NCBI RefSeq assembly: GCF_006345805.1 | Contig: NC_043010.1 | Location: 868,001 to 932,000, forward strand | Direction: 5' to 3' | Source: Octopus sinensis | Lineage: Eukaryota | DNA length: 64,000 nt | Shown: one piece after another, positions 2,878-53,594 of the stretch | Layout: each line of letters opens with the position of its first letter | Numbering within the stretch: the first letter of the stretch is position 1 | Translations under genes and position numbers: made by a program | The notes under the pieces: generated by a model | Told to the model about the DNA's origin: nothing | The model's input: the letters and a program-made list of their open reading frames with translations, nothing else | Databases searched by the model: none

Positions 2878-5055
2878 CATCATCATCATCATCATCATCG
2901 TTTAACGTCCGTTTTCCACGCTAGCACGGGTTGGACGGTTCGACCGGGGTCTGGGAAGCCAGGGGCCGCTCCAGGCTCCAGTCTGAATCTGGCAGAGTTT
3001 CTACGGCTGGATGCCCTTCCTAACGCCAACCACTCCGTGAGTGGATTGGGTGCTTTTTACGTGCCACCTGCACAGGGGCCGGGGGGTCCGGCATTGGTCG
3101 CGATCGGTTCGAGCTTTTAACGTGCCAGCGGCACGGGGGCAACTGGGTCCGGGGTACTTTGGGGATCCGGGGTACTTTGAATGGGTAGGGGGTATGTGGA
3201 ATTGCTGCAGAAAGCAGCCCGGGTTTTTGCAGTCACAGCATATCTCCAGAGATCTCGGTCCTTCGCCATTGCCTCAGTGAGGCCCAATGCTCTGAGGTCA
3301 TGCTTGACTACCTCATCCCATGTCTTCCTGGGTCTACCTCTCCCCCTGATACCTTCAACTGTTTGGGAGTGGCACTTCTTCACACATCTCTCTTCATCCA
3401 TCCGCAGCACATGACCATACCATCGCAAGCGTCGCTCTTGCACACCACATCTGATGCTTCTTATATCCAGCATTTCTCTTAGGATGCTTACACTCTGTCT
3501 TGCGTGCACACTGACATTACACATCCAGCGGATCATGCTAGCTTCATTTCTTTCAAGTCTACGCATGTCCTCTGCAGTCACTGCCCATGTTTCATTACCG
3601 TGAAGCATGGCAGTTCGCACACATGCATCATACAATCTACCTTTTGCTCTGAGGGAGAGACCTTTTGTTGCCAGTAGGGGTAGGAGCTTTCTGAACTTTG
3701 CCCAGGCTATTCGTATTCTAGTGGTGATACTCTCTGTGCATCCACCTCCGCTACTAACTTGGTTACCCAGGTAGCGGAAACTATCAACTACTTCTAGTTT
3801 CTCTCCCTGGAGTGTGATGGAATCTGTTTTCTGAGTGTCTGTTGTGTCTATTGTCCCTGTGCATCTGCCGCACATGAAAGCTATCTTATCTGTTAATTTC
3901 CCTTAATGTTGCTGCACTCTTTATGTGTCCATAACTTACATTGGGTGCATCTTATGGAGTTTCTACCTGTACCTTTCCTACAGATTGAGCAGGGCCACCT
4001 ACCCGAGGGGGTGTGTGCTGAGTACTCTTGCTGCTTACTAATACTTTGGTCTTTGCTACATTTATTCTAAGGCCTTTGATTCCAACCCTTGCTTCCACAC
4101 CCAAAATTTCTCTTCTAGTTCCGGTAGTGATTCTGCTATGAGAGCTAGGTCATCGGCATAGAGGAGCTCCCAGGGGCATCCCGTTTTGAATTCCTCTGTT
4201 ATTGCCTGAAGGACTATGATGAATAAAAGGGGACTGAGGGCTGAGCCCTGGTGCACACCTACTTCTACCGGAATTCTTCACTATATTCGTTGCCAATCCT
4301 AACCTGCTGACAGCCTCTCTGTATAGAGCCTGTACAGCCCTTATTAGCCATTCTTCAATCTCAGTTTCCGCATCGACCACCAGATGAGGAACGGGGAACC
4401 CTGTCAAAGGCTTTCTCCAAGTCTACAAAAGCTATGTAGAGGGGTTTATCTTTAGCTAGGTACTTCTCCTGCAGTTGTCGGACCAGGAATATAGCATCAG
4501 TGGTGCTTCTACCTGGTACAAAACCGAACTGCATTTCATCTAAACAAATCTCTCCCTAATGAGATGGGTTATGACCTTCTCTGAGACCTTCATCACCTGG
4601 TCCAACAGTTTGATACCTCTGTAGTTATTTCTATCTAGAGCATCACCCTTACCCTTGTAGCAGTTGACTATGGTGCTGCTGCACCAGTCATTGGGTATGA
4701 CTCCATTGTGAACTACCTGGTTTAAATGGGGTGACTATGGTATAGCCCACATAGCCAGCTGTTTTAAGCATCTCAGCAGTGATTCCTGATAGGCCAGGGG
4801 CTTTGCTGGTTTCATATCCTTAATTGCCTTATCTACAAGGGAGCTGTCTATTCGGGTAGCTGGTCCCTCTACTGGGTCAACATTTGGCAAGCTCTCCTCC
4901 TCCCATTCATTCTCCTCATTCAGCAGTCTTTCATAATGGCTTCTCCAAGCCTCTTTCTTTCAACTAGCAGTAAAATCAAGTGCCCCATCATCCATGCGGA
5001 CACATTTCTCTCCTATAACATCACTATTTTCTCTGACACACTATCTGGCAATCCG
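2878..5055 (-). mobile_element. 5'-truncated RTE-clade LINE with frameshifted RT, PHD-like finger, 3' UTR and (GAT)n tail
   Basis: RT motifs FVDLEKAFD, QGSALSPLLF, LLYADD; C-terminal GRGRPRKTW and DRDLWRYAV (ORF 3117..3875); (CAT)n on + at 2878-2899; frameshifts present. Confidence 0.93.
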
Positions 5056-14019: not shown

Positions 14020-14261
14020 TACTCTTTTACTCTCTGTACTCTTTTACCGGTTTCAGTCATTTGACTGCGGCCATGCTGGAGCACTGCCTTTAGTCGAGCA
14101 AATCGACCCTAGGACTTATTTTTTGTAAGCCTTGTACTTATTCTATCGGTCTCTTTTGCCGAACCGCTAAGTTACGGCGACGTAAACACACCAGCATCGG
14201 TTGTCAAGCGATGTTGGGGGGGGGGGTGACAATCACAGACACACAAACGTACACACACACA

Positions 14262-14337
<76 letters not shown>

Positions 14338-14500
14338 GACGGGCTTCTTTCAGTTTCCGTCAATCAAATCCACTCACGAGACTTTGGTTGGCTCGAGGCT
14401 ATAGTAGAAGACACTTGCCCAAGGTTCCACGCAGTAGGAGTGAACCCGGAACCATGTGGTTGGTAAACAAGCTACTTACCATACAGCCACTCCTACGCCT
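14020..14500 (-). mobile_element. SINE family A, near-consensus copy
   Basis: Full head, (CA)n(TA)n insert and tail; CpGs intact (GCCGAACCGCTAAGTTACGGCGACGT). Confidence 0.9.
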
Positions 14501-18550: not shown

Positions 18551-19390
18551 AAGTGCAGGCTGAACGTTTGGTTTACAGTTTGTAAATATATGGGTTTGAA
18601 GTGAGAAGCTGAACGGACAGCTATCGTTTTTTTTTTCTCTCAAATGCTTTAGTATGTTTTTGTGGAAGTGTTATGGGTGTGTGTACGTGTTTGTGTGTAT
18701 TATGGGTGCGTGTATGCATATGTATGCATGTGTCTGTGTGATGATACGTGAAGTGTTTGAAAAAATAAAATTAGTTAAGAATTAAGATCGTGGCGGGGGT
18801 GAGGCAATAAGTCACAAAAAGTAACAAAGAAACAAAAGTTGATTTAATTAGACCCCTGGGATGAAAAATACAAAGTCAACGTTGGTGGTATTTGAACTCA
18901 GAAACTCAGAAGATTAAATAGAGACGAAACCACAAAGCGAAGGAATACTGCCCGACGCTCTACCAATTCTAAAGAATTATATAAAAACAAGATTAAGTCA
19001 ATCAGAGTTAAAATAAACGGCAAACAAAGGGAAGTAACTATGATATCGAAAAACTAAGTCACGGATATTTACCAGATTTTTTCTTGTCAAAAGCACAGAT
19101 GGGAGCCTCAGAATCACTTGCTTATGGCGGCTGTCGCTATTGCTTAGTTAAAAATATCTCAGCTGATAAATTGGTGCAGTCACACCATCAGAGTTCCTGG
19201 TTTTGCTCTGTCAAAAACATATAAGTAATGGCTTGTCAAACAATCAACAGATTAGGTCTTAATGGATTATGTATGTACACGTACACAAACACACACAAAC
19301 AGACACATGCACATACATATACACATATATACATACATATATGCATGCATATATATCTATATACTATATACTACATACATATATACATAC

Positions 19391-23399: not shown

Positions 23400-25020
23400 T
23401 GGATATCACAAAGTCTCTCAGGTTCTCAATATGTCAACTGTATGTAGTCCATGTCTGCTACCAGATTCCAAAATGGAAACGCAGATGGCTCTCCTTTCTT
23501 GCACACATCTAATTCCTTTTTTATCCAGTTTTTCTCTCAACACATCCGGGCTTTGCCGTTCAAACACATTTACATTGCACTTCTTACAGAACATGCTTGC
23601 TTCATTTCTTTCTACTTCTCAAGTCCTCTGCATTCGAGGTCAATATCTCACTGTCTTCTTGTCTTGAGACAGCATCCACCTGGGGTGGGTTGAGCTGGCT
23701 TCATTCATCCTCAGTGCTGCATCTCTCACAAACGCCAACCAGGCCTGGCGATTTGAAGCTAACGACTGCATGATCTCTAACCACTCCCTATTCCTTTGAA
23801 TTACAGTTACTACTCATTTTTGTCAGCTGAGTGGACTGAAGCAACATGAAATAAAGGGTCACTGGGAATCGAACTCACGACCTTTCAATCATGAGCTGAA
23901 TACCCTAACCACTAAGCTATGTGCCTTTATACCTACTCTTTTTCTGATAATGAGCAAGGTAATTACACTGAAGATGCCTGAGTCCTGCCTAATTTCTCAT
24001 TAAAATCTTAGTCTTTGCTAAGTTTACCTTGAGGCCTCTCAATTCTTCGTTTAGCTTCCATGTCTGAAATATCTTTATCGATTCAGCTAAGAGCAATAGA
24101 TCATTGCATGTAGGAGTTCCCATGGACATCTAGCCTTAACTCATCTGTAATGACCTGTGGGACCACAATGAATAGGAGAGGACTGAGGACTGAGCCCTGA
24201 TGAACTCCTACCTTCACACTAAATTCATCAATAAAATTGTTATTGATTCTCACTTTACTCACTGCATCTCTGTGTACATAACTTGTACAGCCATCTCTAT
24301 TTATATGAATGTCAAAATGTCTGCATGTGTGTCCTTTATACAAATCCACAATTTTTCAGTTAGAGGGCTCGCACTTTCTATGGTCATTCAAAACCGTCCA
24401 AGGGTGGTTGTGCACATATTTACATTTCCCCAGTCACCCCGCAAAGCCATTAAAAAATCAATAGAAGTGACTTTTTTGTGAATTTTCTATCCAAAACCCA
24501 ATCAAGATGCCCGAAACTTGATACGCCAATTGAATGCCAGCTAGCTGTATGTGATTGGTCGGAGATTTGGACAGTAATCGTGTATATGTGTGCATGCACG
24601 CAGCTGTATATGCATGCACTAGCACTATGACCTGGCGTTGCAGGGTCATAGTGCTAGTCATAAGATATTCAGCTACACCTAGTTCCCTAATGATCACCAC
24701 ACTACTGAATGTGGTACCTTGTCAAATGCCTTCTTCTCAATGAATGTTAAGAACAATGGTTTGCTCTTAGCCAAGTATTTCTATTGCAGTTGTCTCACTG
24801 GGAAGATTCCATTGATAATACCTCTTCCAACCTTGAAATTAAATTGCATTTCATCAAGGTCTGCTCAGTCATAAATCAATTGCACTTTGACCTTAATTTC
24901 TTGATCCAGCAGTTTGATTTCTCTTCATTTTCCTAAACATCACAAGTTACAATCAAGGCAACTGTTGAATTAACTACTAGCTTTGCACCTTCAAAGGCTT
25001 TTGAAATAAATCAATCCCTT
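23400..25020 (-). mobile_element. Decayed RTE LINE, interrupted by a SINE (23812-23925) and a Helitron (24294-24657)
   Basis: VGVHQGSVLSPLLF (ORF 24101..24349), AFD-like and thumb motifs colinear with the 2878-5055 element once the inserts are removed. Confidence 0.8.
24294..24657 (+). mobile_element. Non-autonomous Helitron
   Basis: Starts TC, ends CTAG, inserted between A24293 and T24658 with no TSD; subterminal GC-rich hairpin; removing it restores the RTE sequence GTACAGCCA|TCATAAG. Confidence 0.85.
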
Positions 25021-29007: not shown

Positions 29008-30140
29008 AGAAACTGTATAGGAGACTATCACACACACACACATATTACAGACTTCATTCATTTCTGTCTACCAAATCCACTCAGAAGGCTTTGGTCGGCC
29101 CGAGGCTATAGTAGAAAACACTTGCCCAAGGTGCCATGCAGTGGGACTGAACCCGGAACCATGTGGTTGGTAAGCAAGCTACTTACCACACAGCCACTCC
29201 TGCACTTCATATGAGGTGTGGTGTGTGTAGATATATATATATCTTGATAATTACACAAACACATACATATACATACTAGCACACACATTCATACACAAAA
29301 ACAGGAATCCACATTCATAATTGCAAACAGACACACAGACACAGGTATACATATGTTATACAGTTATAATATGAATATTCATCATAAATGACATATATAG
29401 ACATACACGTATAGGCATGAATGTACACACACACATAAGGAGAAGCACATAGGCATATACATACTCATCTAGAAAGACACATATAGAGACACAGACATAC
29501 CCATATACACATGACCATACACACACAAATATATAGGCGCATGTGCACATGCTCACACACACATACATACAGGCATGCATACACACACATATATATAAAA
29601 CACAGTGCAACCATATGTACATAGTCACAAGTACACGTATCAACACACACACATATAAACATGTGTATGCACACACACACACACACACACATAGACACAT
29701 GTGCGCATAGACACACACACACTCACACACACATACAGGCGCAAGTACACAAACCAACACAGACAGACACACACATAAACACATGTGCACTTACACACAC
29801 ACGCATAGTCACATGTGCACACACACATACTGGCACATGTGCACACACACACACACACCATATAGGCACAAGTACACGTACCAACACACACACACACACA
29901 CCCTACATCCACCCCCACTCATCCACACACCTTCACAATTAACCACAAGGAATGACAATAGTGCCAAAAGTGTCAACGTTACCTGTCAATACAGAGTTGC
30001 AGGTGTGTGCATATGTGCACATAATTGCAAGTCAACGATGCTGTGATGCATTGACAGGAAGCAGTGCTTTATTGTGCACTGTTTTTATGCCAAATGCATT
30101 TAGTGCGTTCCACTAGAGAAAATGAAGAATCTCAAATGAA

Positions 30141-33629: not shown

Positions 33630-34760
33630 TCTACCTCACGCCACCACCACCACCACCACCACCACCGCCGCCACCACCGACACCACCACCGCCGCCGCCG
33701 CCACCACCGCCACCACCATTGTTCCCTTGTTTTTATTGTTATTTTTCTCTTTGGATGTTGTCTTTTAGGTTTGTGGGGCTCTGTACATGATGTGGAGAGT
33801 AAGTGGGGAGGGTGAGGGGGGAGTGGTGCCATGAACTGGGAATTTTCTTGAGATTAACCACCACTGCTATCAGCGCCGATACCACTGCCACCACCCACCA
33901 CCACCACCACCACCACTGCACCACCACCACCACCACCACCACCACCACCACCACCACCACCACCACTACCACCACCACTACCACCACCACCACCACCACC
34001 ACCACCACCACCAGCAAGGCTATGATGACCACAAACACTATTGAGACCACTACCATCACCTTCACCATCACCACCACCTTCACCAAGAACACCATCATGC
34101 CACTGCTGATACCACTACCACCACCACCATCAACTCCAGGACTGCCACCAAGACCACCACCACCACCACCACTGCTGCTGCTACGAACACCAGTGTCATT
34201 ATCATCATCACCAGTACTACCACCATCACCACCACCACCACCACCACCATCAGCACTGGGAACATCACCACACCACTGCTGCTGCCATTACTATCATCAG
34301 CACCACCAGTATCACCACCACTATCACCAAGACCACTACCATCCCAACCATCATCATCATCATCACCTGTACTACCACCAAGACGACTTCAACGTTGACC
34401 ACCACCACCACCACCATCATCATCACCAATACTACCACCAAGACCACCACAACGATGACCGTTACCAGCACCACCATATCCACCACAACCACCATCATCA
34501 TCATCATCATCATCATCACCCATACTACCACCAACACCACCACAAAGACGACTACTACTACCATCACCACCACCACCAACCACCACCAACACCATCATCA
34601 TCACCAAGATCACAACCACCACCACAACCATCATTACCCCATGCACCCCCACCCCCACCCCCACCCCCACCCCCACCACAACCACAACCACCATCATCCA
34701 CCACCATCACCACTACCAAGACCAACCGCCTCACCCACCAACAGCAACAAAAAGGCAAAT
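33630..34760. repeat. Degenerate (ACC/CAT)n trinucleotide tract
   Basis: Direct inspection; source of the poly-T/H/P ORFs in the track. Confidence 0.9.
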
Positions 34761-35887
34761 GAGAAGAAAAACAAAGGAGTTTCTGTGTGTGGGTTGATGG
34801 TTGGGTGGAAGAGCGCTTGGTTGATACGGTGTCTGTTTGATTCTACACCCAGGGATTTTTATGAAGTGGTTTTTATCAAAAACGCAAGGTCAGTGCGAGA
34901 GGTATTAAACAGCGCTAAGGGACATCACTCACTGCTATGTACTTCCCTTAGATCTTTTACAACAACAATTACAACAACAAGGATTTATTGTTTCTAATAA
35001 AAGTAATCTTTTATCTTTCGCTTGTTTCAGTTACTGGACTGTGGCCATGCTGGGGCACCACCTTGAAGGGTTTAGTCCAGGCATGAGCAACTGTTTATGA
35101 GAAACGAGCCACGTGAGACATGGCTCTTACTCAGAACAGCTGCTCTATTAAAAAGATGATTCAAGGTAATAATTTTGTATTGGGCATGTTGTTTGGGGAA
35201 GTCCAGCTGGCTGTATGCGGCCCACAAGCCACAGTGGCTGGTTTAGATGAACAAACTGCCTCCAGTATGTATTCTATTGGTCTCTTTTGCCAAACTGCTA
35301 CATTATGGGGATGTAAATAAACCAGCACTGGTTGTCAAATGGCAGGGTAGGGGTAACAAACACAATATAACACACACACGTACCTGTGTGTGTTTGTGTA
35401 TGTACACACACACACATATATATATATATATGTATTATTCCAAACAGTTTGGTTTGGATTCTGTGCTACTTAATGTGGCCTTCCTTGACCAATCACAGCC
35501 CATCTACCACTAGCCAACTTGGACTTCCTGCACCTCCCCATTCATTCAGATTTCTACTGGCCTGAGGAAAGGCCCTGTTAGGGGCTTTGAAACTTTAAGT
35601 AGCACAAAATCTAAATCAAACTGTTTTGAACAATGCATGTAACTCTCAATAAATGTTTTGAGTGCCATTTTTATCATTTGTCTACTGACTTGTATATATA
35701 TATATATATATATATACCATCAGTGGTGGCTGTCCATTGTTGGTCAAACTTGTGGACAGTAAGTAGTAAGGCAGTTGGCATCATTCTTCCCATCAGACTG
35801 CATCTCTGGGCCTCTACACCATATACCAGGTGGTTACAAAGAAAGCAACAAGCATGGTCAACGATGAGGCTGCCCTGCCCAAGCAGC

Positions 35888-37130: not shown

Positions 37131-37188
37131 TTAGAAAAAACCCACACAAAGAAAAGAAAATCAAAGCTCAAAATGGATTATTACTTAC

Positions 37189-39624
37189 TGGATGTGTCCC
37201 CTCTGTTGTAGCTTGACAGTGTATTCCAGAGGCAGAGACTTTCCTTGATTCCAGACTTGAGTCAAGCCCAGAGTGTGAATCAGCACAAAAGTCTGACATG
37301 TGAGCTTTTTCATACTTTCCTAGATCTGGTACAGCCACTGGAGTTCCGCTTTGAGAGGTCATCTCGTCTGTGTAAAATTTTAGTTGTCTGCTTTCATCCA
37401 CAAATTCACTGGTGTTAGCAAAGTGTGCCGCCCTCTGGTTATTTCTGCGTACTATGCACATGGTAATTGAGACAACAATTGCAATGGACACAATGAGGAT
37501 GGCCACAAGTATTATAATAAACAAATTGATGTGGATTTTTTTGTCTGATTTCGAATAAACAGTAGTCATTAATTTTGTTGTTTTATTGCTCACTGTTAGC
37601 ATCAAAGACATTGTAGTCTTGGCAGAAAGCACTGGTGTTCCACTGTCTTTGACAACAAACTGGAGCTCATAGGAGCCGGCATCATTTTGATAAACAGTAC
37701 GTGAAAATGATAGAACACCACTGTAAGGATTAACTGTAAAAAGCTGCTTATCGTTGCCACTTAGAATTTCGTATTTGAGAAAGGCATTCTCATAACTATC
37801 CCTATCTGATGCTTTCAGAACTGTGATATCATTCTTGCTTTGTGGATGGTAGTGGACATCTAAACTGAAAGGGTTAACACTAGGAAAGCTGAAATATGGT
37901 GCGTTGTCATTCTCATCCATCACTTCAACAATCACATTAGCTGTGTTGTTAAGGGACGGCATACCATTGTCTTTTACTAAAACTTTAAATTCATAAACGT
38001 CCTGTTGTTCTCGATCTAATGATTCAGTAGTTAGAATAAATCCGAAATCCGAAATTTGGAAAGGAAATAAATGGTTTTTGCTTTGCTCTAGATAAAAACT
38101 CAATTGACCTCCCAAGCCTTCATCTTGGTCTGTTGCATTGATAAAACCAACTGGGAAATTTATTTTCTCATTTTCATAGGTCAGAAATCTAAAAGTGTCC
38201 TTCGTAAACTGTGGTCGTACATCATTGACATCCATCACTTGCACAGAGAAAGAATTTTCTGTGTGTAGGGGAGGGGAGCCTTTATCTCGGCAAGTAATGG
38301 TAAAATCAATAGAATGTTCGCGTTCTCTGTCGACAAGATTTTTTATGACTACTTTGTATTTATTTCTTCCTAAGCTCTGAAGCTGGACTTTATCATGGTA
38401 AAGGTCACAGCTGACCTCACCGTTCTGTCCACTGTCATTATCAGTAACTTTTACATAGGCAATGAAACTGCCAATTTTGATTCCTTCAGAAATGGTAACT
38501 GTGTCTCCAGTGGATTCTGAAAAGAAGTTAACTTCCACCGAGGGAGCATTGTTATGTTGGTTGATGATATTTATCAAAACAATTGCGGTCGAACTGAGCG
38601 GTGGACTGCCATTATCACTTGCTTCAATAAACAGTTTATATGTCCGTCTTTTTTCCAAACTAAATTTATTGTTTAGAAATATCTCGCCTGTTCTTGGATC
38701 GAGCCGAAAATAAGTCTTTGTCAAATTTGATGTTTTCGAATTAATGTGGAATAAAAATTTACCATTTTTACCAGAATCAAGGTCTGTTGCAGACATAGTA
38801 ACAAGTGGTGTATCAAAGTGATGTGTATTTTCAAGAGAGACATTATAAATATTCTTTGAGAAGACGGGAGGGTTATCATTAAGATCAGCTACGTTTATAT
38901 GAATATCCAAAAAACCTTGCCTTGAAGGAGAGCCTCCGTCTCTTGCTTTAACTCTCAAGTTATATTTGTCTTTTACTTCTCTGTCTAAACTTACATCTAA
39001 AACAATTCCTAATTTGGCAGTGCCATCAACTGTTTTGGTAACAGATAATTTAAATGGATCATCAACATTTCTTTCCAGCATGTATGTAATTTGTGAATTC
39101 AGAATGCCGACATCTCTGTCAATGGCATTTGGTATAAACTTGACCATTCCCTTCTTATCTCCTTCGTCAAACTGGAGGGTTATGTTTTTAACAGGAAACT
39201 CAGGCTGATGGTCATTAATATCATTTATAATAACTTTCACTTCCAATATCTTAATAAATGAATCCATATTTTGCACAGCAACATCGACGATTCTATAGCA
39301 TTCACTGTTATATTTACATAATGTCTCAGCATCTAGAGTTTGGGCAGTATACAGCTCACCACTCTTAGACACATTAAACATTTCAGTACTCCGACCTTTG
39401 CCTTTCTTTAAATTACTGAACGTAACCATTTTATAGTCAAGAAGATGTGTGTCAGCTGCAATGTTTCCGATGTAAGTGCCGGACAGTTTTTGTTCATCCA
39501 CATGGTAGGTAACATCCAAACACTGGGCACCAATAAATATAAAAATTAGCAGCCACAAGTTAACGAGCTTGCTGTTATTATTGCACAGGAACGCCAACAA
39601 AGAAATATGCAGAGAACACTCCAT
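37189..39624 (-). CDS. PCDH: Protocadherin, large exon: signal peptide, EC1-EC6, transmembrane helix, start of cytoplasmic tail
   Basis: ORF 37168..39624 has six cadherin repeats (DINDHQP, DLNDNPP, NQHNNAP, DVNDVRP, DENDNAP linkers; LDRE and DxD motifs), a C-x5-C in EC1 (CKYNSEC) and a hydrophobic TM (LFIIILVAILIVSIAIVVSITMCIV). CCA|GTAAGT donor at 37188 ends the exon after 812 codons (phase 0). Symbol is family level only. Confidence 0.95.
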
Positions 39625-42352: not shown

Positions 42353-42724
42353 TTAGATACTTTTGTTGGATAAGCCTACTATTTTGAAAAACAGTTAATA
42401 TAGCCATAGTTTTTAATGTCACAGAAATAAAAAGGAGAGGAAGAGGATATTTCCTAAAGTAGGGCCTGAGTGGTAACGAATTAAAAACTCTAAGCTTGAA
42501 AGCAGAAATTAATATACACTGTTTCTGCATTGCATTAAGTCAGCACACCAAGTTTGGTAAAAGCTTGAGTGGACATTATGAACCCCACAAGAATTTTGCA
42601 TGATTTGGGTCAAAAGTGTTGATCAGTTTCTTCAGTTTTTGGGGGTGATGTTTTTTTTAAAAAACCTTAAAATAAAGATTATTTTTCTTGTTTACTTTAA
42701 AAAAATCAAGAAGTCATAACCTAA

Positions 42725-43112
42725 TACTCTTTTACTCTTTTACTTGTTTCAGTCGTTTGACTGCAGCCATGCTGGAGCACCACCTTTAGTCGAGCAAATC
42801 GACCCCAAGACTTATTCTTTGTAAGCCTAGTACTTATTCTATCGGTCTCTTTTGCCAAACCACTAAGTTACGGGGACATAAACACACCACAAGCGATGTT
42901 GGGGGGACAAACACAGACACTCAAACACACACGTATATATATACTTATATCCGATGGGCTTCTTTCAGTTTCCGTCTACCAAATCCACTCAGAAACTTTG
43001 GTTGGCCCGAGGCTATAGTAGAAGACACTTGCCCAAGGTGCCACGTAGTGGGACTGAACCCGGAACAATGTGGTTGGTAAGCAAGCTACTTACCACACAG
43101 CCACTCCTGTGC
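42725..43112 (-). mobile_element. SINE family A
   Basis: Full copy with partial CpG decay. Confidence 0.9.
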
Positions 43113-43480
43113 CTAAGATATATATCTCATACTTTGAATATAAGAATTGTAATGAATTTTCTAATGGTTGGTATTTTTAAAAACACAATATTTTTTTGCA
43201 ACAAATTAAATTTTGAAGTCTAAACATGTTTCAAAGTATTCATAAATATTTTTGCTTTGATATTCTTATACTTCTTCCCTGTTTCAATAGTTTGAATAGA
43301 ATGACATAAAATGATACTCAGAGTAACAATCCAAGATGCTTCAACCTCTAACTTATAAATAAAAATATATACATAAATATATATATATATATATATATAC
43401 ATACATATATATATATACATATATATATGCATGTATATATAGATATATATATATATATTAGATATAATATATATATATAC

Positions 43481-46690: not shown

Positions 46691-46729
46691 CCCTCATGTG
46701 TTGTCAAATATATATATATATATATACTC

Positions 46730-47656
46730 TTTCTCTTTACTCTTTAACTTGTCATTTGACTGTGGCCATGCTGGAGCACCACCTTTAGTCGAGCAAATCG
46801 ACCCCAGGACCTATACTTTGTAAGCCTAGTACTTATTCTATCAGTCTTTTTTGCTGAACTACTAAGTTACGGGGGCGTAAACATACCACATCGGTGGTCA
46901 AGCGATGTTGGGGAGACAAACACAGATACACAGACATATACACACACATACATATATACATATATATGACAGGCTTCCTTCAGTTTCCGTCTACCAAATC
47001 CACTCATAGGGCTTTGGTCGGCCCAAGGCTATAGTAGAAGACACTTGCCCAAGGTGCCACACAGTGGGACTGAACCCAGAACCAAGTGGTTCGTAAGAAA
47101 GCTACTTATGACACAGCCACTCCTATGCCTATATATATATATATACATATATGTATGTATAAATGCACAAGTGTCTATGTGTTTTTGAGAACAATGTGTA
47201 TTGGAAAACTGTGTAAAAACCAGCAGAAAATGATTGAGAGCTTGAGTTGGCAGAATCAATAAAAACCCAAAGAGAATGTCTTGTAGTTATTTCTCTAGTT
47301 ATATCTTTATATGTCTTGACTTAAATCCTGCTGGTGATCACTCTGCTTCTAATTCCTCCTGGGGCAAGAATATATATACTCTTATAAACACACACATTCA
47401 GACAAACCAGGTACACCTATGTAGATATATGTATACATTTATTCTTTTATATGTTTCAGTCATTTGACTGCAGCCATGCTGGAGCACTACCTTTAGTTGA
47501 CCAAATCGACACTGGGTTTATTCTTTGTAAGTCTAGTACTTATTGTATGGGACTCTTTTGCCGAACCACTAAGTTACAGGAACATAAACACACCAACATC
47601 AGTTGTCAAGCGATGGTGGTGGTGGTGGTGGTGGGCAAACACAGATATACAAACAT

Positions 47657-47689
<33 letters not shown>

Positions 47690-48864
47690 CTATGGGCTTC
47701 TTTCAGCTTCCGTCTACCAAATCCACTCGCAAGGCTTTGGTCGGTCCGAGGTGAGAGTAGAAGACATTTGCCCTGGAACCATGTGGTTGGGAAGCAAGCT
47801 TCTTACCACACACCCACTCCTTCGACTATATATGTATATACATATATGAACATATGTACACTCACTTCATAGATAAATATTTCTACACTCACAGCCATGC
47901 ATATCTTTTACTCTCTCTTATTTGTTTCAGTCAGTTGACAGTGGCCATGCTGGAGCACCACTTTTAGTCGAGCAAATCGATGCCACAACTTATTCTTTGT
48001 AAGCCTGGTACTTGTTCTATCGGTCTCTTTTGCCAAACCACTAAGTTATGGGGACATAAGCACACCACCATCAGTTGTCAAGTGATGTTGGGGTGACAAA
48101 CACAGCCACACAAACATATACACATGCATACATATATATTTGTACATATATACGACAGGCTTTGGTCAGCCCGAGGCTATAGTAGAAGACACTTGCCCAT
48201 GGTGCCATGCAGTGGGAATGAACCCAGAACCATGTGGTTGGTAAGCAAGCTACTTAACACACAGCCACTCCTGCACCTATATATATATATATATATATAC
48301 ATACACATGTATATATACATATATATACATGTATATATACATATATATATATACATGCATAGACAAACACTTTCTTGATTTATTTGGAAGCACAAGATAC
48401 CCCCATTTATGTATGTGTAGGCAAATGTCCATATATGTACACACATGTATGCCATCATTATCAACATTCGATGTCTGCTTGCTCTGCTGGTGTGAATTGG
48501 ACATTTTATATTCTCAGCCAGTTTATTCTTTTTTACATTACAATAATTTCCTACATGGTGTACACATGCATGTGTATGTCTGTGTGTCCATGTATGTGTC
48601 ACTGTGTGCATATGTGTGTCTGTGAGTGTGTGTGCATACATGTATCTTTTATTTTTTATCTTTCACTTGTTTCAGTCATTAGATTTTGGCCATGCTGGGG
48701 CACTCACTTGGATTTTTAGTCAAATGAATCGACCCCAGTAATTTTTTTTAAAGCCTGGTACTTATTCTATCAGTCTCTTTTGCCAAACCACTAAGTTAGA
48801 GGGATGGAAACATCAACACCAGTTGTCAAGTGGTGGTGGTGGAGTGGGACAAACCCCCCCACCA

Positions 48865-51080: not shown

Positions 51081-51858
51081 CATACATACATGCATTTCTA
51101 TAATTGTATATTGAGATATACATTGCATAAATGAGATGATATTTTATACTTCATTTTTACAATTCGATCAGTAAAGTCTTCAGACAGAACGGAAACTCTT
51201 ACAAATGTTTTGTGTAAAAGCATAAAATTCTTACACACACACACAGAAAAAAAAAAGAATAAAAAATCTCTTAAAGACAGGAACTGTCCCAGACTTAATG
51301 CCATCATAAAATTTTGATGTCTAAGCAGCTTATATCATATTATATGGTCAAGTAATAAAAACAATGAAGGATGTCATAAAAAAAAAAAGGAAATTTGTAG
51401 GATATCATATAAATTGTGATATGACATATGAGGTAGTTGTCATAAAAATGTAAAATTGTATCCAATAAAAATGTTATGGTGCTTCTGATTGCCATAGTTA
51501 ACTGATTGATCTGGTCCAGACAAATATGACAAATGGAGAAAGTTAAAGCTAAAGCTGTGTGGTTATGAACTGTGCACTGCAACCCTCTGGTTTCAGGTTC
51601 AGTACTATTGCATGGTAGCCTTAGGCTAGTGTTTTCTGCAACAGAGGTCCAAGCCCTGGTTGACCGATACCTTTGTGAGTGAATGTGAATTTGGTTAATT
51701 GCAACTGGGTAAAGCTTGTTGCATATATAACTACATACACATACACACACACATATAGGCAAATCAACTATCAATGATAAATTCCAACTCATAACCAGCA
51801 CAAGTCCAAGATATGTTCACAGTGAAAATTATTAGTTTGATGCTTCTTGAAAAAAACA

Positions 51859-51895
<37 letters not shown>

Positions 51896-52108
51896 ATATA
51901 TATGTATATATTATATATATATATACTAAGCAATAAGGGTTTAGAAACGAATTGCCTACCACATACCGAATTTAGAAATAGCAGTCAAAGGGTTATAGCT
52001 ATTTCTTCTACTAAAAAGGGAGATCTCAGTAAAACAGCAATTGGAAGGCTGACCAAACAGGTAAGAGAGAATGAATTGACTGCAATCTATCATACATTTT
52101 TTAAGTTA

Positions 52109-52212
52109 TCTACGGACGTACGTTTCGAAATCAAGGTTTTAGGAAAGCATAAGAATTAAACATTAAAATTAATACTTCTATCTTACCGAAACTTCTTTTC
52201 TCTTCAGGTAGG
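52109..52212 (-). ncRNA. Type I hammerhead ribozyme, copy 1 (first pair of helix I mismatched as assembled)
   Basis: Minus strand: CTAC-CTGAAGA-GAAA...TTTC-GAAAC-GTAC-GTC-CGTAG. Confidence 0.7.
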
Positions 52213-52705
52213 AATACTATAATCATAAATGATTATATATTGAATTTTGAGATACTAGGAGGCACCAACTCAACTCAGTTATCAGAGCGAGCTAGATCCG
52301 CAACTAGTATCACCGAATTCAAATTTGTGAATGAACGATTGTTTTTGTCAAACAGCCCCTTCGCACGGCGTGTAGCAAAACAAGATGCTGTGGTCATCTA
52401 CTGAGATAAAAATGGTTTCCGTAAATAATGAAGGGTGAAATTAATTAATTTGGAAAATTATCAATTTACCCAAGTAGTCTTGGCATGCAAAAGCCTCATT
52501 CGAGTAAAATTTAAGTAAATACTAAGCAATAAGGGTTTAGCAACGAATTGCCTTACCACATACCGAATTTAGAAATAGCAGTCAAAGGGTTATAGCTATT
52601 TCTTCTACTAAAAAGGGAGATCTCAGTAAAACAGCAATTGGAAGGCTGACACAACAGGTAAGAGAGAATGAATTGACTGCAATCTATCATACATTTTTTA
52701 AGTTA

Positions 52706-52812
52706 TCTACGGACGTACGTTTCGAAATCAAGTTTTTAGGAAAGCATAAGAATTAAACATTAAATATTAAATAATTCTATCTTACCGAAACTTCTTTTCT
52801 CTTCAGCGTAGA
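52706..52812 (-). ncRNA. Type I hammerhead ribozyme, copy 2, apparently intact
   Basis: Minus strand: TCTACG-CTGAAGA-GAAA(AG)AAGTTT...AAACTT(GA)TTTC-GAAAC-GTAC-GTC-CGTAGA. Perfect 6-bp helix I, G10.1-C11.1, complete core, GUC site between 52712 and 52711. Confidence 0.85.
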
Positions 52813-53068
52813 ATACTATAATCATAAATGATTATATATTGAATTTTGAGATACTAGGAGGCACCAACTCAACTCAGTATCAGAGCGAGCTAGAATCCGC
52901 AACTAGTATCACCGAATTCAAATTTGTGAATGAAACGATTGTGTCAACAGCCCTTCTTCGCAACCGCGTGTAGACAAACAAGATGTTGTGGGTCATCTAC
53001 TGAGATAAAATATGGTTATCCGTAAAATGAAGGGTGAAATTAATAATTCGGAATAATTATCAATTATT

Positions 53069-53445
53069 CACAAATTTGAATTCGGTGATAATAGTTTAGG
53101 ATTCTAGTAATTAATTCCCCTCATTCTTAAGGAAACTATATATATATATATTATATATATATATATAATATAATATATATATAATATATTATATAAATTA
53201 TATATATATACTGTATGTGAAGTATTATTATGTATACTGAGATCTCCCTTTTTAGTAGAAGAAATAGCTATAACCCTTTGACTGCTATTTCTAAATTCGG
53301 TATGTGGTAAGGCAATTCGTTGCTAAACCCTTATTGCTTAGTATACTTAAATTTTCCTCGAATGAGGCTTTTGCATGCCGAAGACTACTTGGTGTAATTG
53401 ATAATTTCCAAATTAATTAATTTCACCCTTCATTATTACGGATAA

Positions 53446-53446
<1 letters not shown>
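53069..53446 (-). repeat. Inverted fragments of the 596-bp unit (53069-53108 and 53236-53446) separated by (TA)n
   Basis: Reverse complements match the unit interior and the unit-unit junction, respectively. Confidence 0.9.
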
Positions 53447-53486
<40 letters not shown>

Positions 53487-53520
53487 TATATAATATATAT
53501 GTATGTATAAGTATATATGT

Positions 53521-53551
<31 letters not shown>

Positions 53552-53594
53552 ATATACACAAGCACACACACGCTTGGATGGCAATGATCAGAGC

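What the first reader, a model, noticed from the sequence alone, without database searches (positions are those of the whole stretch)
52706..52812. Apparently intact type I hammerhead ribozyme with a very long helix II and a palindromic helix III
Seen on the minus strand: helix I TCTACG/CGTAGA (6 perfect pairs, then a 2x2 loop and AGT/ACT), core CUGAAGA, helix II starting G10.1-C11.1 (GAAA/UUUC, 2x2 loop, AAGUUU/AAACUU, then a further ~50-nt AU-rich stem-loop), GAAA, helix III AC-GUAC-GU and a GUC cleavage triplet between 52712 and 52711. Established: these are the invariant hammerhead core residues, and short self-complementary helix III sequences (here ACGUACGU) occur in dimer-forming hammerheads of Penelope-like elements and satellite repeats. 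Inference: an active self-cleaving RNA. The helix II insertion is long enough that short-descriptor searches could miss it.
Basis: partly seen in the sequence, partly recalled or inferred. Interest (0 to 1): 0.88.

Follow-up and report, generated by a model that had tools for sequence, protein, structure and literature searches.

The report
Octopus retrozyme-like repeat with hammerhead ribozyme
The motif is a real, sequence-intact type I hammerhead ribozyme inside a ~597-base tandem non-coding retroelement of an octopus genome; this kind of element is already known from other animals, so it is a sound but fairly ordinary find, and its cleavage activity is untested.

Summary
On the minus strand at 52812..52706 lie helix I (6 bp), CUGAAGA, a 76-nt helix II closed by G10.1-C11.1, GAAA, the palindrome ACGUACGU and a GUC site, cut between 52712 and 52711.

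Rfam Hammerhead_1 aligns to exactly these coordinates over its full length, but only when about 140 nt are searched. It scores 20.4 bits against a gathering score of 34, because 72 nt of helix II are skipped.

The motif sits in a ~597-nt head-to-tail repeat of 1.9 copies, 94% identical. A second, damaged hammerhead lies at 52213..52108. An inverted partial copy lies upstream, and the whole is embedded in (TA)n microsatellite. The unit is non-coding, 34.5% GC, and folds better than shuffles (z = -3.35).

The host is an Octopus close to O. bimaculoides. A diverged relative of the unit in O. bimaculoides keeps the core. Four of six helix I pairs and two of four helix II pairs are changed on both sides there and still pair.

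Best reading: a non-autonomous element of the retrozyme / Penelope-like type. It is a new member of a known kind, with an unusually long helix II and unit. Catalysis, circular RNA and copy number are untested.

The parts
52701..52817 (-). Hammerhead ribozyme, upstream copy ('copy 2'), sequence-intact. Helix I is 6 bp plus a 2x2 loop plus 3 bp. Core CUGAAGA. Helix II is 4 bp, an A.A/G.G internal loop, 6 bp and an AU-rich arm. Then GAAA, helix III AC-GUAC-GU, and GUC. Predicted cleavage between 52712 (C17) and 52711.
52108..52213 (-). Hammerhead, downstream copy ('copy 1'), damaged. The helix I 5' strand reads UCCUAC instead of UCUACG, leaving only 4 bp and an unpaired C after GUC. There is a U.C mismatch in the 6-bp part of helix II (AACCUU for AAACUU), plus changes in the distal arm. 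The equivalent GUC site is 52115|52114.
52115..52711 (-). One repeat unit measured from cleavage site to cleavage site: 597 nt, 34.5% GC. As a circle its minimum free energy is -135.7 kcal/mol, z = -3.35 against 100 dinucleotide shuffles, with 61% of bases paired.
51920..53066 (-). Head-to-tail array of about 1.9 units, 94% identical over 560 nt. No reading frame open between stops exceeds 83 aa, and none has a Pfam match.
53066..53107 (-). 42-nt inverted copy of unit positions 52890-52931, abutting the 5' end of the array. It forms a 42-bp hairpin with a 134-nt loop, which gave the weak MIR1435-like Rfam match.
53235..53456 (+). Inverted partial copy of the unit (222 nt, without the hammerhead), lying upstream of the array as read on the minus strand. 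Positions 53235-53344 are 100% complementary to 52519-52628.
51858..51925 (.). (TA)n microsatellite at the 3' edge of the array.
53137..53210 (.). (TA)n microsatellite between the array and the inverted copy.
53447..53556 (.). (TA)n microsatellite at the outer edge of the inverted copy.

Best explanation
The motif is the type I hammerhead ribozyme of a ~597-nt non-coding, non-autonomous retroelement. The element is of the animal 'non-LTR retrozyme' / Penelope-like-element-dependent kind, and it is inserted as a partial tandem plus an inverted truncated copy into a (TA)n microsatellite of an Octopus genome.

Shown here: the sequence and the predicted fold; the tandem and inverted anatomy; the lack of coding capacity; the excess folding energy of the unit; homology to elements in two other Octopus genomes; and compensatory changes in helices I and II.

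Inferred from the published model (PMC7229834, PMC7761336):
1. The minus strand is transcribed across the repeats.
2. Helices I and II form. Helix III closes either as a 2-bp/GUAC hairpin, the same geometry as the self-cleaving mussel Mg353 hammerhead (GAAACGCGCGUC), or as an 8-bp duplex between the ACGUACGU palindromes of two copies (a double hammerhead).
3. The 2'-OH of C17 (52712) attacks its 3' phosphate. This leaves a 2',3'-cyclic phosphate and a 5'-OH on C 52711.
4. Where both flanking ribozymes work, a unit-length RNA is released, circularised by an RtcB-type tRNA ligase, and copied back into DNA by a Penelope-like reverse transcriptase/GIY-YIG endonuclease.

At this locus only the upstream ribozyme looks competent. 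This copy is therefore probably an ageing insertion that could at most be cut once.
For: Core and helices. Helix I and II pair probabilities of 0.86-0.97 in context.

Rfam Hammerhead_1 aligns over its full length at both copies, 20.4 and 20.7 bits.

The architecture matches the published canonical metazoan type I hammerhead (6-bp helix I, 4-bp helix II, 1-2 bp helix III with a palindromic loop): PMC4209133. Helix III has the same form as in the experimentally cleaving mussel and coral retrozyme hammerheads: supplement of PMC7229834.

Tandem unit of low GC, non-coding and self-paired. These are the published retrozyme traits (PMC7229834; PMC7761336).

A partial tandem plus an adjacent inverted truncated copy, with microsatellite insertion, is the published Penelope-like insertion anatomy: bioRxiv 2021.04.23.441226. 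It is seen here.

Relatives: O. bimaculoides L001 85405-84855(-) has (TA)n, an inverted partial copy, and a hammerhead at the collinear place. Its core is identical except at N7. Helix I pairs 2.2/1.2, 2.4/1.4, 2.5/1.5 and 2.6/1.6, and helix II pairs 10.2/11.2 and 10.3/11.3, are changed on both sides and still pair. O. vulgaris L008 ~19200-18990(-) is a truncated inverted-plus-direct copy between two (TA)n runs.
Against: - Both Rfam scores are below the gathering score of 34, and the default Rfam runs found nothing.
- The hammerhead fold is no more stable than shuffles (z = -0.44). The helix III hairpin has no predicted stability (0.0 kcal/mol).
- Loop 2 is an internal loop leading into a long arm, so the canonical loop 1-loop 2 contact cannot be recognised.
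- The 597-nt unit is longer than the 150-450 bp reported for animal retrozymes.
- I saw only one locus in the window and two relatives in 615 kb of other octopod DNA, so high copy number is not shown.
- The covariation rests on a single independent relative. That relative was first picked up by a descriptor that demands pairing, and its own helix III is degenerate (ACGUCAUA).
- The hammerhead region differs between the two tandem copies about as much as the rest of the unit does. There is therefore no sign of selection at this locus.
- No Penelope-like RT/GIY-YIG gene was seen in 680 kb (a crude regex only).
Confidence: 0.72

Rival explanations
1. This is the pseudo-LTR / 3'-terminal part of an autonomous Penelope-like element, present as severely 5'-truncated copies. 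On this reading it is not an independent non-autonomous retrozyme, and the hammerhead is the pLTR ribozyme.
For: The inverted truncated copy next to a partial tandem and the microsatellite target are hallmarks of Penelope-like insertion. A 2026 preprint argues that animal retrozymes derive from pLTRs. The L008 relative is an extreme 5'-truncated copy.
Against: The repeat period is 597 nt with no RT/GIY-YIG coding capacity between the two hammerheads. A partial-plus-full Penelope-like tandem would have a period of the full element length. Metazoan Penelope-like hammerheads are described as minimal, with no or tiny helix III, a 7-8 bp helix II and a 4-5 bp helix I. This one has the canonical 6/4/2-bp layout. 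No GIY-YIG ORF was found in 680 kb of sampled DNA.
Confidence: 0.15
2. A real hammerhead by descent, but a dead relic. Neither copy cleaves, because helix III is too weak, helix II is AU-rich and over-long, and the tertiary contact is lost.
For: Helix III hairpin energy is 0.0 kcal/mol. Overall fold z = -0.44. Copy 1 is visibly damaged. The two copies differ by 6%, so the insertion is old. The hammerhead is no more conserved than its flanks. The mussel hammerheads, which also lack the canonical loop contacts, are already slow at about 0.1 per min.
Against: Copy 2 has no defect in any invariant position or core-proximal pair. Internal loops sit exactly 6 bp up helix I and 4 bp up helix II, where loops 1 and 2 sit in canonical ribozymes. 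The 8-nt palindrome gives a -9.8 kcal/mol intermolecular helix III. The same 2-bp-plus-tetraloop helix III cleaves in the mussel element.
Confidence: 0.3
3. A chance match to the hammerhead consensus inside an ordinary AT-rich tandem duplication.
For: The strict descriptor fires in 1.6% of shuffled windows. A 20-bit Hammerhead_1 hit is expected tens of times per Gb-sized genome by my scaling of the E-value. One apparently random strict hit was seen in L007.
Against: The motif lies in exactly the genomic setting known for animal type I hammerheads. A homologous element in another species carries a hammerhead at the collinear position, with an identical core and six doubly changed but still paired positions. 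Features not required by the descriptor also fit: G10.1-C11.1, the palindromic helix III that matches the Rfam consensus ACGcgCGU, and the helix extensions.
Confidence: 0.04

Closest known systems
Type I hammerheads of invertebrate non-LTR retrozymes (mussel Mytilus galloprovincialis Mg353, coral Acropora millepora Amil224; PMC7229834)
   Same: Type I topology. Helix I 6 bp, helix II 4 bp closed by G-C. Helix III of 2 bp plus a palindromic tetraloop (mussel ACGCGCGU, here ACGUACGU). GUC site. Located in low-GC, non-coding head-to-tail repeats whose RNA is predicted to be highly self-paired. Mollusc host. Like the mussel ribozymes, it lacks recognisable canonical loop 1-loop 2 nucleotides.
   Different: Helix II continues for 68 further nucleotides instead of ending in a 5-6 nt loop. 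N7 is A rather than U. The unit is 597 nt, against 220-390 nt. Only 1.9 copies are present at this locus. No expression or cleavage data exist. It falls below the Rfam gathering score.
Minimal hammerheads in pseudo-LTRs of Penelope-like elements (PMC4209133; Lunse et al. 2017, as cited in PMC7761336)
   Same: Palindromic 15.2-16.2 region that allows dimeric double hammerheads. Insertion anatomy (partial tandem, adjacent inverted truncated copy, microsatellite target) as described for Penelope-like elements.
   Different: Those motifs have no or almost no helix III loop, a 7-8 bp helix II with a bulged base, and a 4-5 bp helix I. They flank an RT/GIY-YIG ORF. Here the layout is the canonical 6/4/2 bp and there is no ORF.
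Amphibian satellite 2 / axolotl retrozyme hammerheads (HHR_Amex1/2; PMC7229834)
   Same: [quoted passage not shown]
   Different: The amphibian helix III is 1 bp (Amex1). The units are 330-350 bp and occur in more than 100,000 copies. Helix II is short with the conserved loop 2.
Rfam RF00163 Hammerhead_1
   Same: Full-length alignment to model positions 1-45. All invariant residues match, and helix III matches the consensus ACGcgCGU.
   Different: 20.4 bits against a gathering score of 34. Ten model positions of helix II are replaced by a 72-nt local end. It is found only with relaxed filters.

Membership tests
Hammerhead ribozyme, type I | Invariant core C3 U4 G5 A6 N7 G8 A9 / G12 A13 A14 / A15.1-U16.1 / H17 | tested here: met
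   CUGAAGA, GAAA, A15.1...U16.1 and C17 are all present in copy 2. They are also present in copy 1 and in the O. bimaculoides relative.
Hammerhead ribozyme, type I | Three helices around the core, helix I open-ended, G10.1-C11.1 closing helix II | tested here: met
   Helix I 6/6 Watson-Crick pairs. Helix II has 4 bp starting G-C and continues further. Pair probabilities 0.86-0.97.
Hammerhead ribozyme, type I | Metazoan-type helix III: 1-2 bp with a small palindromic loop (PMC4209133) | tested here: met
   AC-GUAC-GU. The 8-nt palindrome gives a -9.8 kcal/mol duplex between two copies. The hairpin alone has 0.0 kcal/mol.
Hammerhead ribozyme, type I | Loop 1-loop 2 tertiary contact | tested here: inconclusive
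   Internal loops lie 6 bp up helix I (U.U/A.A) and 4 bp up helix II (A.A/G.G), which are the canonical distances. However, loop 2 is not a hairpin loop and the conserved nucleotides cannot be identified.
Hammerhead ribozyme, type I | Score at or above the Rfam RF00163 gathering threshold | tested here: not met
   20.4 bits (copy 2) and 20.7 bits (copy 1) against 34. Both copies were missed at default filters. The shortfall is attributable to the 72-nt helix II insertion.
Hammerhead ribozyme, type I | Helices maintained by compensatory change in relatives | tested here: met
   Against the O. bimaculoides relative, 4 of 6 helix I pairs and 2 of 4 helix II pairs changed on both sides and all still pair. 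Only one independent relative was available, so this is thin.
Hammerhead ribozyme, type I | Site-specific Mg2+-dependent self-cleavage | not testable with these tools
   Needs in vitro transcription.
Animal non-LTR retrozyme | Type I hammerhead in head-to-tail repeats without LTR/PBS/PPT or ORF | tested here: met
   1.9 tandem units, each with a hammerhead. No reading frame open between stops exceeds 83 aa and none has a Pfam hit. PBS and PPT were not specifically searched for.
Animal non-LTR retrozyme | Monomer of about 150-450 bp | tested here: not met
   597 nt between cleavage sites.
Animal non-LTR retrozyme | Low GC (<45-50%) and highly self-paired unit RNA | tested here: met
   GC 0.345. 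Circular minimum free energy -135.7 kcal/mol, z = -3.35, with 0 of 100 shuffles as low.
Animal non-LTR retrozyme | Many genomic copies; abundant linear and circular unit-length RNA | not testable with these tools
   The host genome and transcriptome are not searchable here. I saw only 1 locus in 64 kb plus 2 relatives in 615 kb of other octopod DNA.
Autonomous Penelope-like element | RT plus GIY-YIG ORF between pseudo-LTRs | tested here: not met
   No such ORF in or near the unit.
Autonomous Penelope-like element | Insertion anatomy: partial tandem, adjacent inverted 5'-truncated copy, microsatellite target | tested here: met
   The same anatomy is seen at L001 and L008. Published description.

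The most novel reading that the evidence does not exclude
A cephalopod family of unusually large (~600 nt) retrozymes. Its hammerhead has replaced hairpin loop 2 with an internal loop plus an expandable arm (20 nt in one member, 68 nt in another), so the helix I-helix II tertiary contact would be made by two internal loops. Its insertions (inverted truncated copy plus tandem, always in (TA)n) would give direct structural evidence that animal retrozymes are integrated by the Penelope-like GIY-YIG/RT machinery.
Probability: 0.25. Interest if true: 0.55.

Novelty: new member of a known kind. Interest (0 to 1): 0.4.

Why it matters
Type I hammerheads in tandem repeats are well documented in cnidarians, bivalves, flatworms, insects and amphibians. 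I found no paper in the held library describing them in cephalopods.

This case shows three things:
- Curated models and their speed filters miss members with a long helix II, so such ribozymes are probably under-counted.
- Unit length in this element class can reach about 600 nt.
- The insertion sites carry the signature of Penelope-like integration, which bears on the open question of who mobilises animal retrozymes.

None of this overturns current views.

Tried and rejected
1. Rfam at gathering threshold on the window and at E<=10 on 701 nt gave no hammerhead. The hit appeared only on 141-nt slices.

2. Fetching other copies through predicted proteins failed. A 77-aa ORF of the unit and a concatenated six-frame translation of the unit found nothing.

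3. Pattern scans for CTGANGAGAAA-N45-75-TTTCGAAACGTACGTC found 0 matches in JGI metagenome contigs and 0 in GTDB genome contigs. These collections are not expected to hold octopus DNA.

4. A literature search for the strings GAAACGUACGUC and GAAACGTACGTC found nothing relevant.

5. The orthologous site in O. bimaculoides could not be reached. Locus L001 ends about 0.3-1 kb short of it. Neighbouring genes were either too long to be served or lay elsewhere.

6. L007 61764-61694(-) passes the strict descriptor, but it has A-U at 10.1/11.1 and no family homology. I treated it as chance.

7. L001 22843-22932(+) passes a relaxed descriptor and has an ACAUAUGU palindrome, but Rfam does not score it. 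It is left unresolved.

8. A regex for GIY-YIG ORFs in 680 kb found none. This is too crude to exclude Penelope-like elements.

9. MAFFT put the helix II 5' strands of the two species out of register. I therefore tabulated the pairs by script rather than with the count of structure pairs.

Full report
**1. What is in the sequence**

Read on the minus strand, window 52817..52701 is:

AGU-AU-UCUACG / CUGAAGA / GAAA-AG-AAGUUU...(arm)...AAACUU-GA-UUUC / GAAA / CGUACGU / C / CGUAGA-UA-ACU

This is a complete type I hammerhead.
- Helix I has six Watson-Crick pairs, a 2x2 internal loop and three more pairs.
- The core strand CUGANGA has N7 = A.
- Helix II opens with G10.1-C11.1 and has four pairs, an A.A/G.G internal loop, six pairs and an AU-rich distal arm. 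In all, 76 nt lie between the core strands.
- G12 A13 A14 follow.
- Helix III is A15.1-U16.1 and C15.2-G16.2 around GUAC.
- C17 is at 52712, so the scissile bond lies between 52712 and 52711.

RNAfold returns helices I and II as the minimum-energy and centroid structures for 131 nt. In a 301-nt context the ten core-proximal pairs have probabilities of 0.86-0.97. The energy is not unusual for this AU-rich composition (z = -0.44).

**2. Is it more than chance?**

A strict descriptor requires a 6-bp helix I, CUGANGA, a 4-bp helix II, GAAA and UH, with helix II up to 120 nt. It finds this one site in the window and at least one site in 16 of 1000 dinucleotide shuffles.

Rfam at gathering threshold reports only a tRNA. 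At E<=10 on 701 nt it again reports no hammerhead. Given 141 nt, where the filters are laxer, Hammerhead_1 (RF00163) aligns model positions 1-45 to exactly 52812..52706. The score is 20.4 bits, E = 0.0077, and 72 nt of helix II are treated as a local end.

That score is below the gathering score of 34. Scaled by my own arithmetic, it corresponds to about 8e-4 expected hits for this family per 64-kb window. That is tens of chance hits in a genome of a few Gb. The score alone is therefore suggestive, not decisive.

**3.

The motif lies in a head-to-tail repeat. About 1.9 units occupy 53066..51920 on the minus strand and are 94% identical.

A second hammerhead sits 597 nt downstream at 52213..52108. 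It has the same core and the same helix III. Its helix I 5' strand is UCCUAC, which leaves four pairs and an unpaired C after GUC. It also has a U.C mismatch in helix II and changes in the distal arm. It looks impaired. I note that judging copy 1 against a structure derived from copy 2 is biased toward this conclusion.

Measured from cleavage site to cleavage site, the unit is 597 nt and 34.5% GC. Folded as a circle it reaches -135.7 kcal/mol, z = -3.35, with none of 100 shuffles as low. No reading frame open between stops exceeds 83 aa, and none has a Pfam hit.

Upstream on the minus strand lie two inverted pieces:
- a 42-nt inverted piece of the unit at 53066-53107;
- a 222-nt inverted partial copy without the hammerhead at 53235-53456, of which 110 nt are 100% complementary to 52519-52628.

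(TA)n microsatellite runs lie at both outer edges and between the pieces: 51858-51925, 53137-53210 and 53447-53556. The unit occurs nowhere else in the window.

**4. Host**

The window carries a single-exon protocadherin at 37168-39624(-), with Cadherin_2 plus Cadherin repeats. It is 98% identical to O. bimaculoides protocadherin beta-2.

Window positions 17-50783 are collinear with O. bimaculoides CM046614.1 (locus L001) at about 81-96% nucleotide identity. The host is therefore an Octopus close to, but not the same as, that assembly. L001 stops a few hundred bases short of the orthologous site of the repeat, so presence or absence there could not be checked.

**5. Relatives**

In 615.5 kb of octopod DNA fetched through protocadherin genes (L001-L008), two relatives of the unit were found.

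(a) O. bimaculoides L001 85405..84855(-). After a (TA)n run comes an inverted partial copy, then a direct copy. The 3' region of the direct copy is 76% identical to the window unit. The direct copy carries, at the collinear position, AUCAUG/CUGAUGA/GUGG-20 nt-UCAC/GAAAC GUCAUA/CAUGAU-UAACU. Hammerhead_1 scores it at 17.2 bits.

Against window copy 2, the core is identical except at the free position N7.
- Helix I reads GC, UA, AU, CG, UA, AU in the relative and GC, CG, AU, UA, CG, UA in the window. Four of the six pairs are changed on both sides and all six still pair.
- Helix II reads GC, UA, GC, GU in the relative and GC, AU, AU, AU in the window. Two pairs are double changes and one is a single change.

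The descriptor that first flagged this site demands pairing. A chance hit in this amount of DNA has a probability of about 0.1-0.15. Its position and strand inside an independently homologous element are not explained by that selection. Helix III is degenerate in this copy (ACGUCAUA), and its loop 2 is 20 nt.

(b) O. vulgaris L008 ~19200..18990(-). This is a short element between two (TA)n runs. It consists of inverted and direct 3'-terminal parts that form a hairpin with arms of about 28 nt, and it has no hammerhead.

So three loci in three genomes share three traits: a (TA)n target, 5' truncation and head-to-head inverted copies.

**6. Comparison with what is known**

Cervera and de la Pena define the canonical metazoan type I hammerhead as helix I 6 bp, helix II 4 bp, and helix III 1-2 bp capped by a 2-4 nt palindromic loop. 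It is often active as a dimer formed between tandem copies (PMC4209133). The window motif fits this exactly.

The experimentally self-cleaving retrozyme hammerheads of mussel (...CUGAUGAGUCUUUUGUAGACGAAACGCGCGUC) and coral (...GAAACAGUACUGUC) have the same palindromic helix III (supplement of PMC7229834).

Animal non-LTR retrozymes are described as low-GC, non-coding tandem repeats of 150-450 bp with type I hammerheads. They are expressed as self-paired circular RNAs after self-cleavage and ligation by a tRNA ligase, and are probably mobilised by Penelope-like elements (PMC7229834; PMC7761336; 2026 preprint).

Penelope-like insertions are described as partial tandems with an adjacent inverted 5'-truncated copy and a bias for microsatellites (bioRxiv 2021.04.23.441226).

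The octopus element matches these descriptions with four exceptions:
- the unit is 597 nt;
- helix II is long;
- the canonical loop-loop nucleotides are absent, as they also are in mussel;
- copy number and expression are unknown.

It is not an autonomous Penelope-like element, because it has no ORF. Its hammerhead is also not the minimal Penelope-like type.

**7. Mechanism**

Shown: the sequence, the predicted fold, the repeat anatomy, homology and compensatory change.

Inferred:
1. The minus strand is transcribed.
2. Helices I and II fold.
3. Helix III closes, either as the 2-bp/GUAC hairpin (no predicted stability, yet the same geometry cleaves in mussel) or as the 8-bp duplex of two ACGUACGU palindromes (-9.8 kcal/mol).
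4. Transesterification at C17 follows.
5. A 597-nt RNA is released where both flanking ribozymes work.
6. The RNA is circularised and retrotransposed.

At this locus the downstream ribozyme is damaged. The two copies differ by 6%, and the difference is no lower in the ribozyme than elsewhere in the unit. I therefore take the locus to be an old insertion in which one ribozyme happens to remain intact.

**8. Verdict**

- The element is a new member of a known kind. A cephalopod example was not found in the held literature. It differs from described members in the helix II arm, the unit length, and the fact that default Rfam searches miss it.
- Interest is moderate to low (0.4).
- My confidence that this is a genuine hammerhead by descent is about 0.9.
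- My confidence in the retrozyme-like, Penelope-dependent reading is about 0.7.
- My confidence that copy 2 cleaves in vitro is about 0.55.

Noticed in passing
window 37168-39624 (-): Single-exon protocadherin ORF of 818 aa (Cadherin_2 plus five or more cadherin repeats). It is 98% identical to O. bimaculoides protocadherin beta-2. The window is collinear with O. bimaculoides chromosome CM046614.1 at about 81-96% nucleotide identity, so the host is a closely related Octopus.
   Followed up: yes
window 23853-23927 (-): tRNA-Met (CAT), called by ARAGORN and by Rfam tRNA (37.3 bits). I did not check whether it is a functional gene or part of a tRNA-derived SINE.
   Followed up: partly
window 3117-3875 (-): 252-aa ORF that by eye resembles the C-terminal part of a non-LTR (LINE) reverse transcriptase. 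It has no Pfam hit at E<=0.001.
   Followed up: partly
window ~14030-14500, 29022-29202, 42724-43115, 46708-47140, 47444-47772 and others: A dispersed repeat of about 170-400 nt, 82-95% identical to many sites in L001 and L004. It is probably an octopus SINE. TG/CA and TA microsatellites pervade the window and produce most of the long 'ORFs'.
   Followed up: no
window 52890-52931 vs 53066-53107: A 42-bp inverted repeat with a 134-nt loop at the 5' edge of the array. It gave a weak MIR1435-like (MITE-type hairpin) Rfam match of 27 bits, far below the gathering score.
   Followed up: partly
L001 22843-22932 (+), O. bimaculoides: A hammerhead-like motif: UUUUCU/CUGAUGA/GAAG-57 nt-CUUC/GAAA/CAUAUGUC/AGAAGU. 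It shares the long helix II and 8-nt palindromic helix III design and starts about 500 nt after a (TA)n run. It is not scored by Rfam Hammerhead_1 and BLAST shows no homology to the unit. It could be chance or another family.
   Followed up: partly
L008 ~18990-19200 (-), O. vulgaris: A truncated relative of the element between two (TA)n runs. Inverted and direct 3' ends form a hairpin with arms of about 28 nt, and there is no hammerhead.
   Followed up: partly
window 53235-53344 vs 52519-52628: The inverted partial copy is 100% complementary to copy 2 over 110 nt, although the two tandem copies are only 94% alike. A read-through transcript would form a long perfect double-stranded RNA. I did not examine why the identities are uneven; gene conversion, separate insertion events and template heterogeneity are all possible.
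   Followed up: no
window 33800-35000 (+): Long 'ORFs' rich in His, Thr and Pro (319 aa and 200 aa). These are translations of low-complexity repeats, not evident genes.
   Followed up: no
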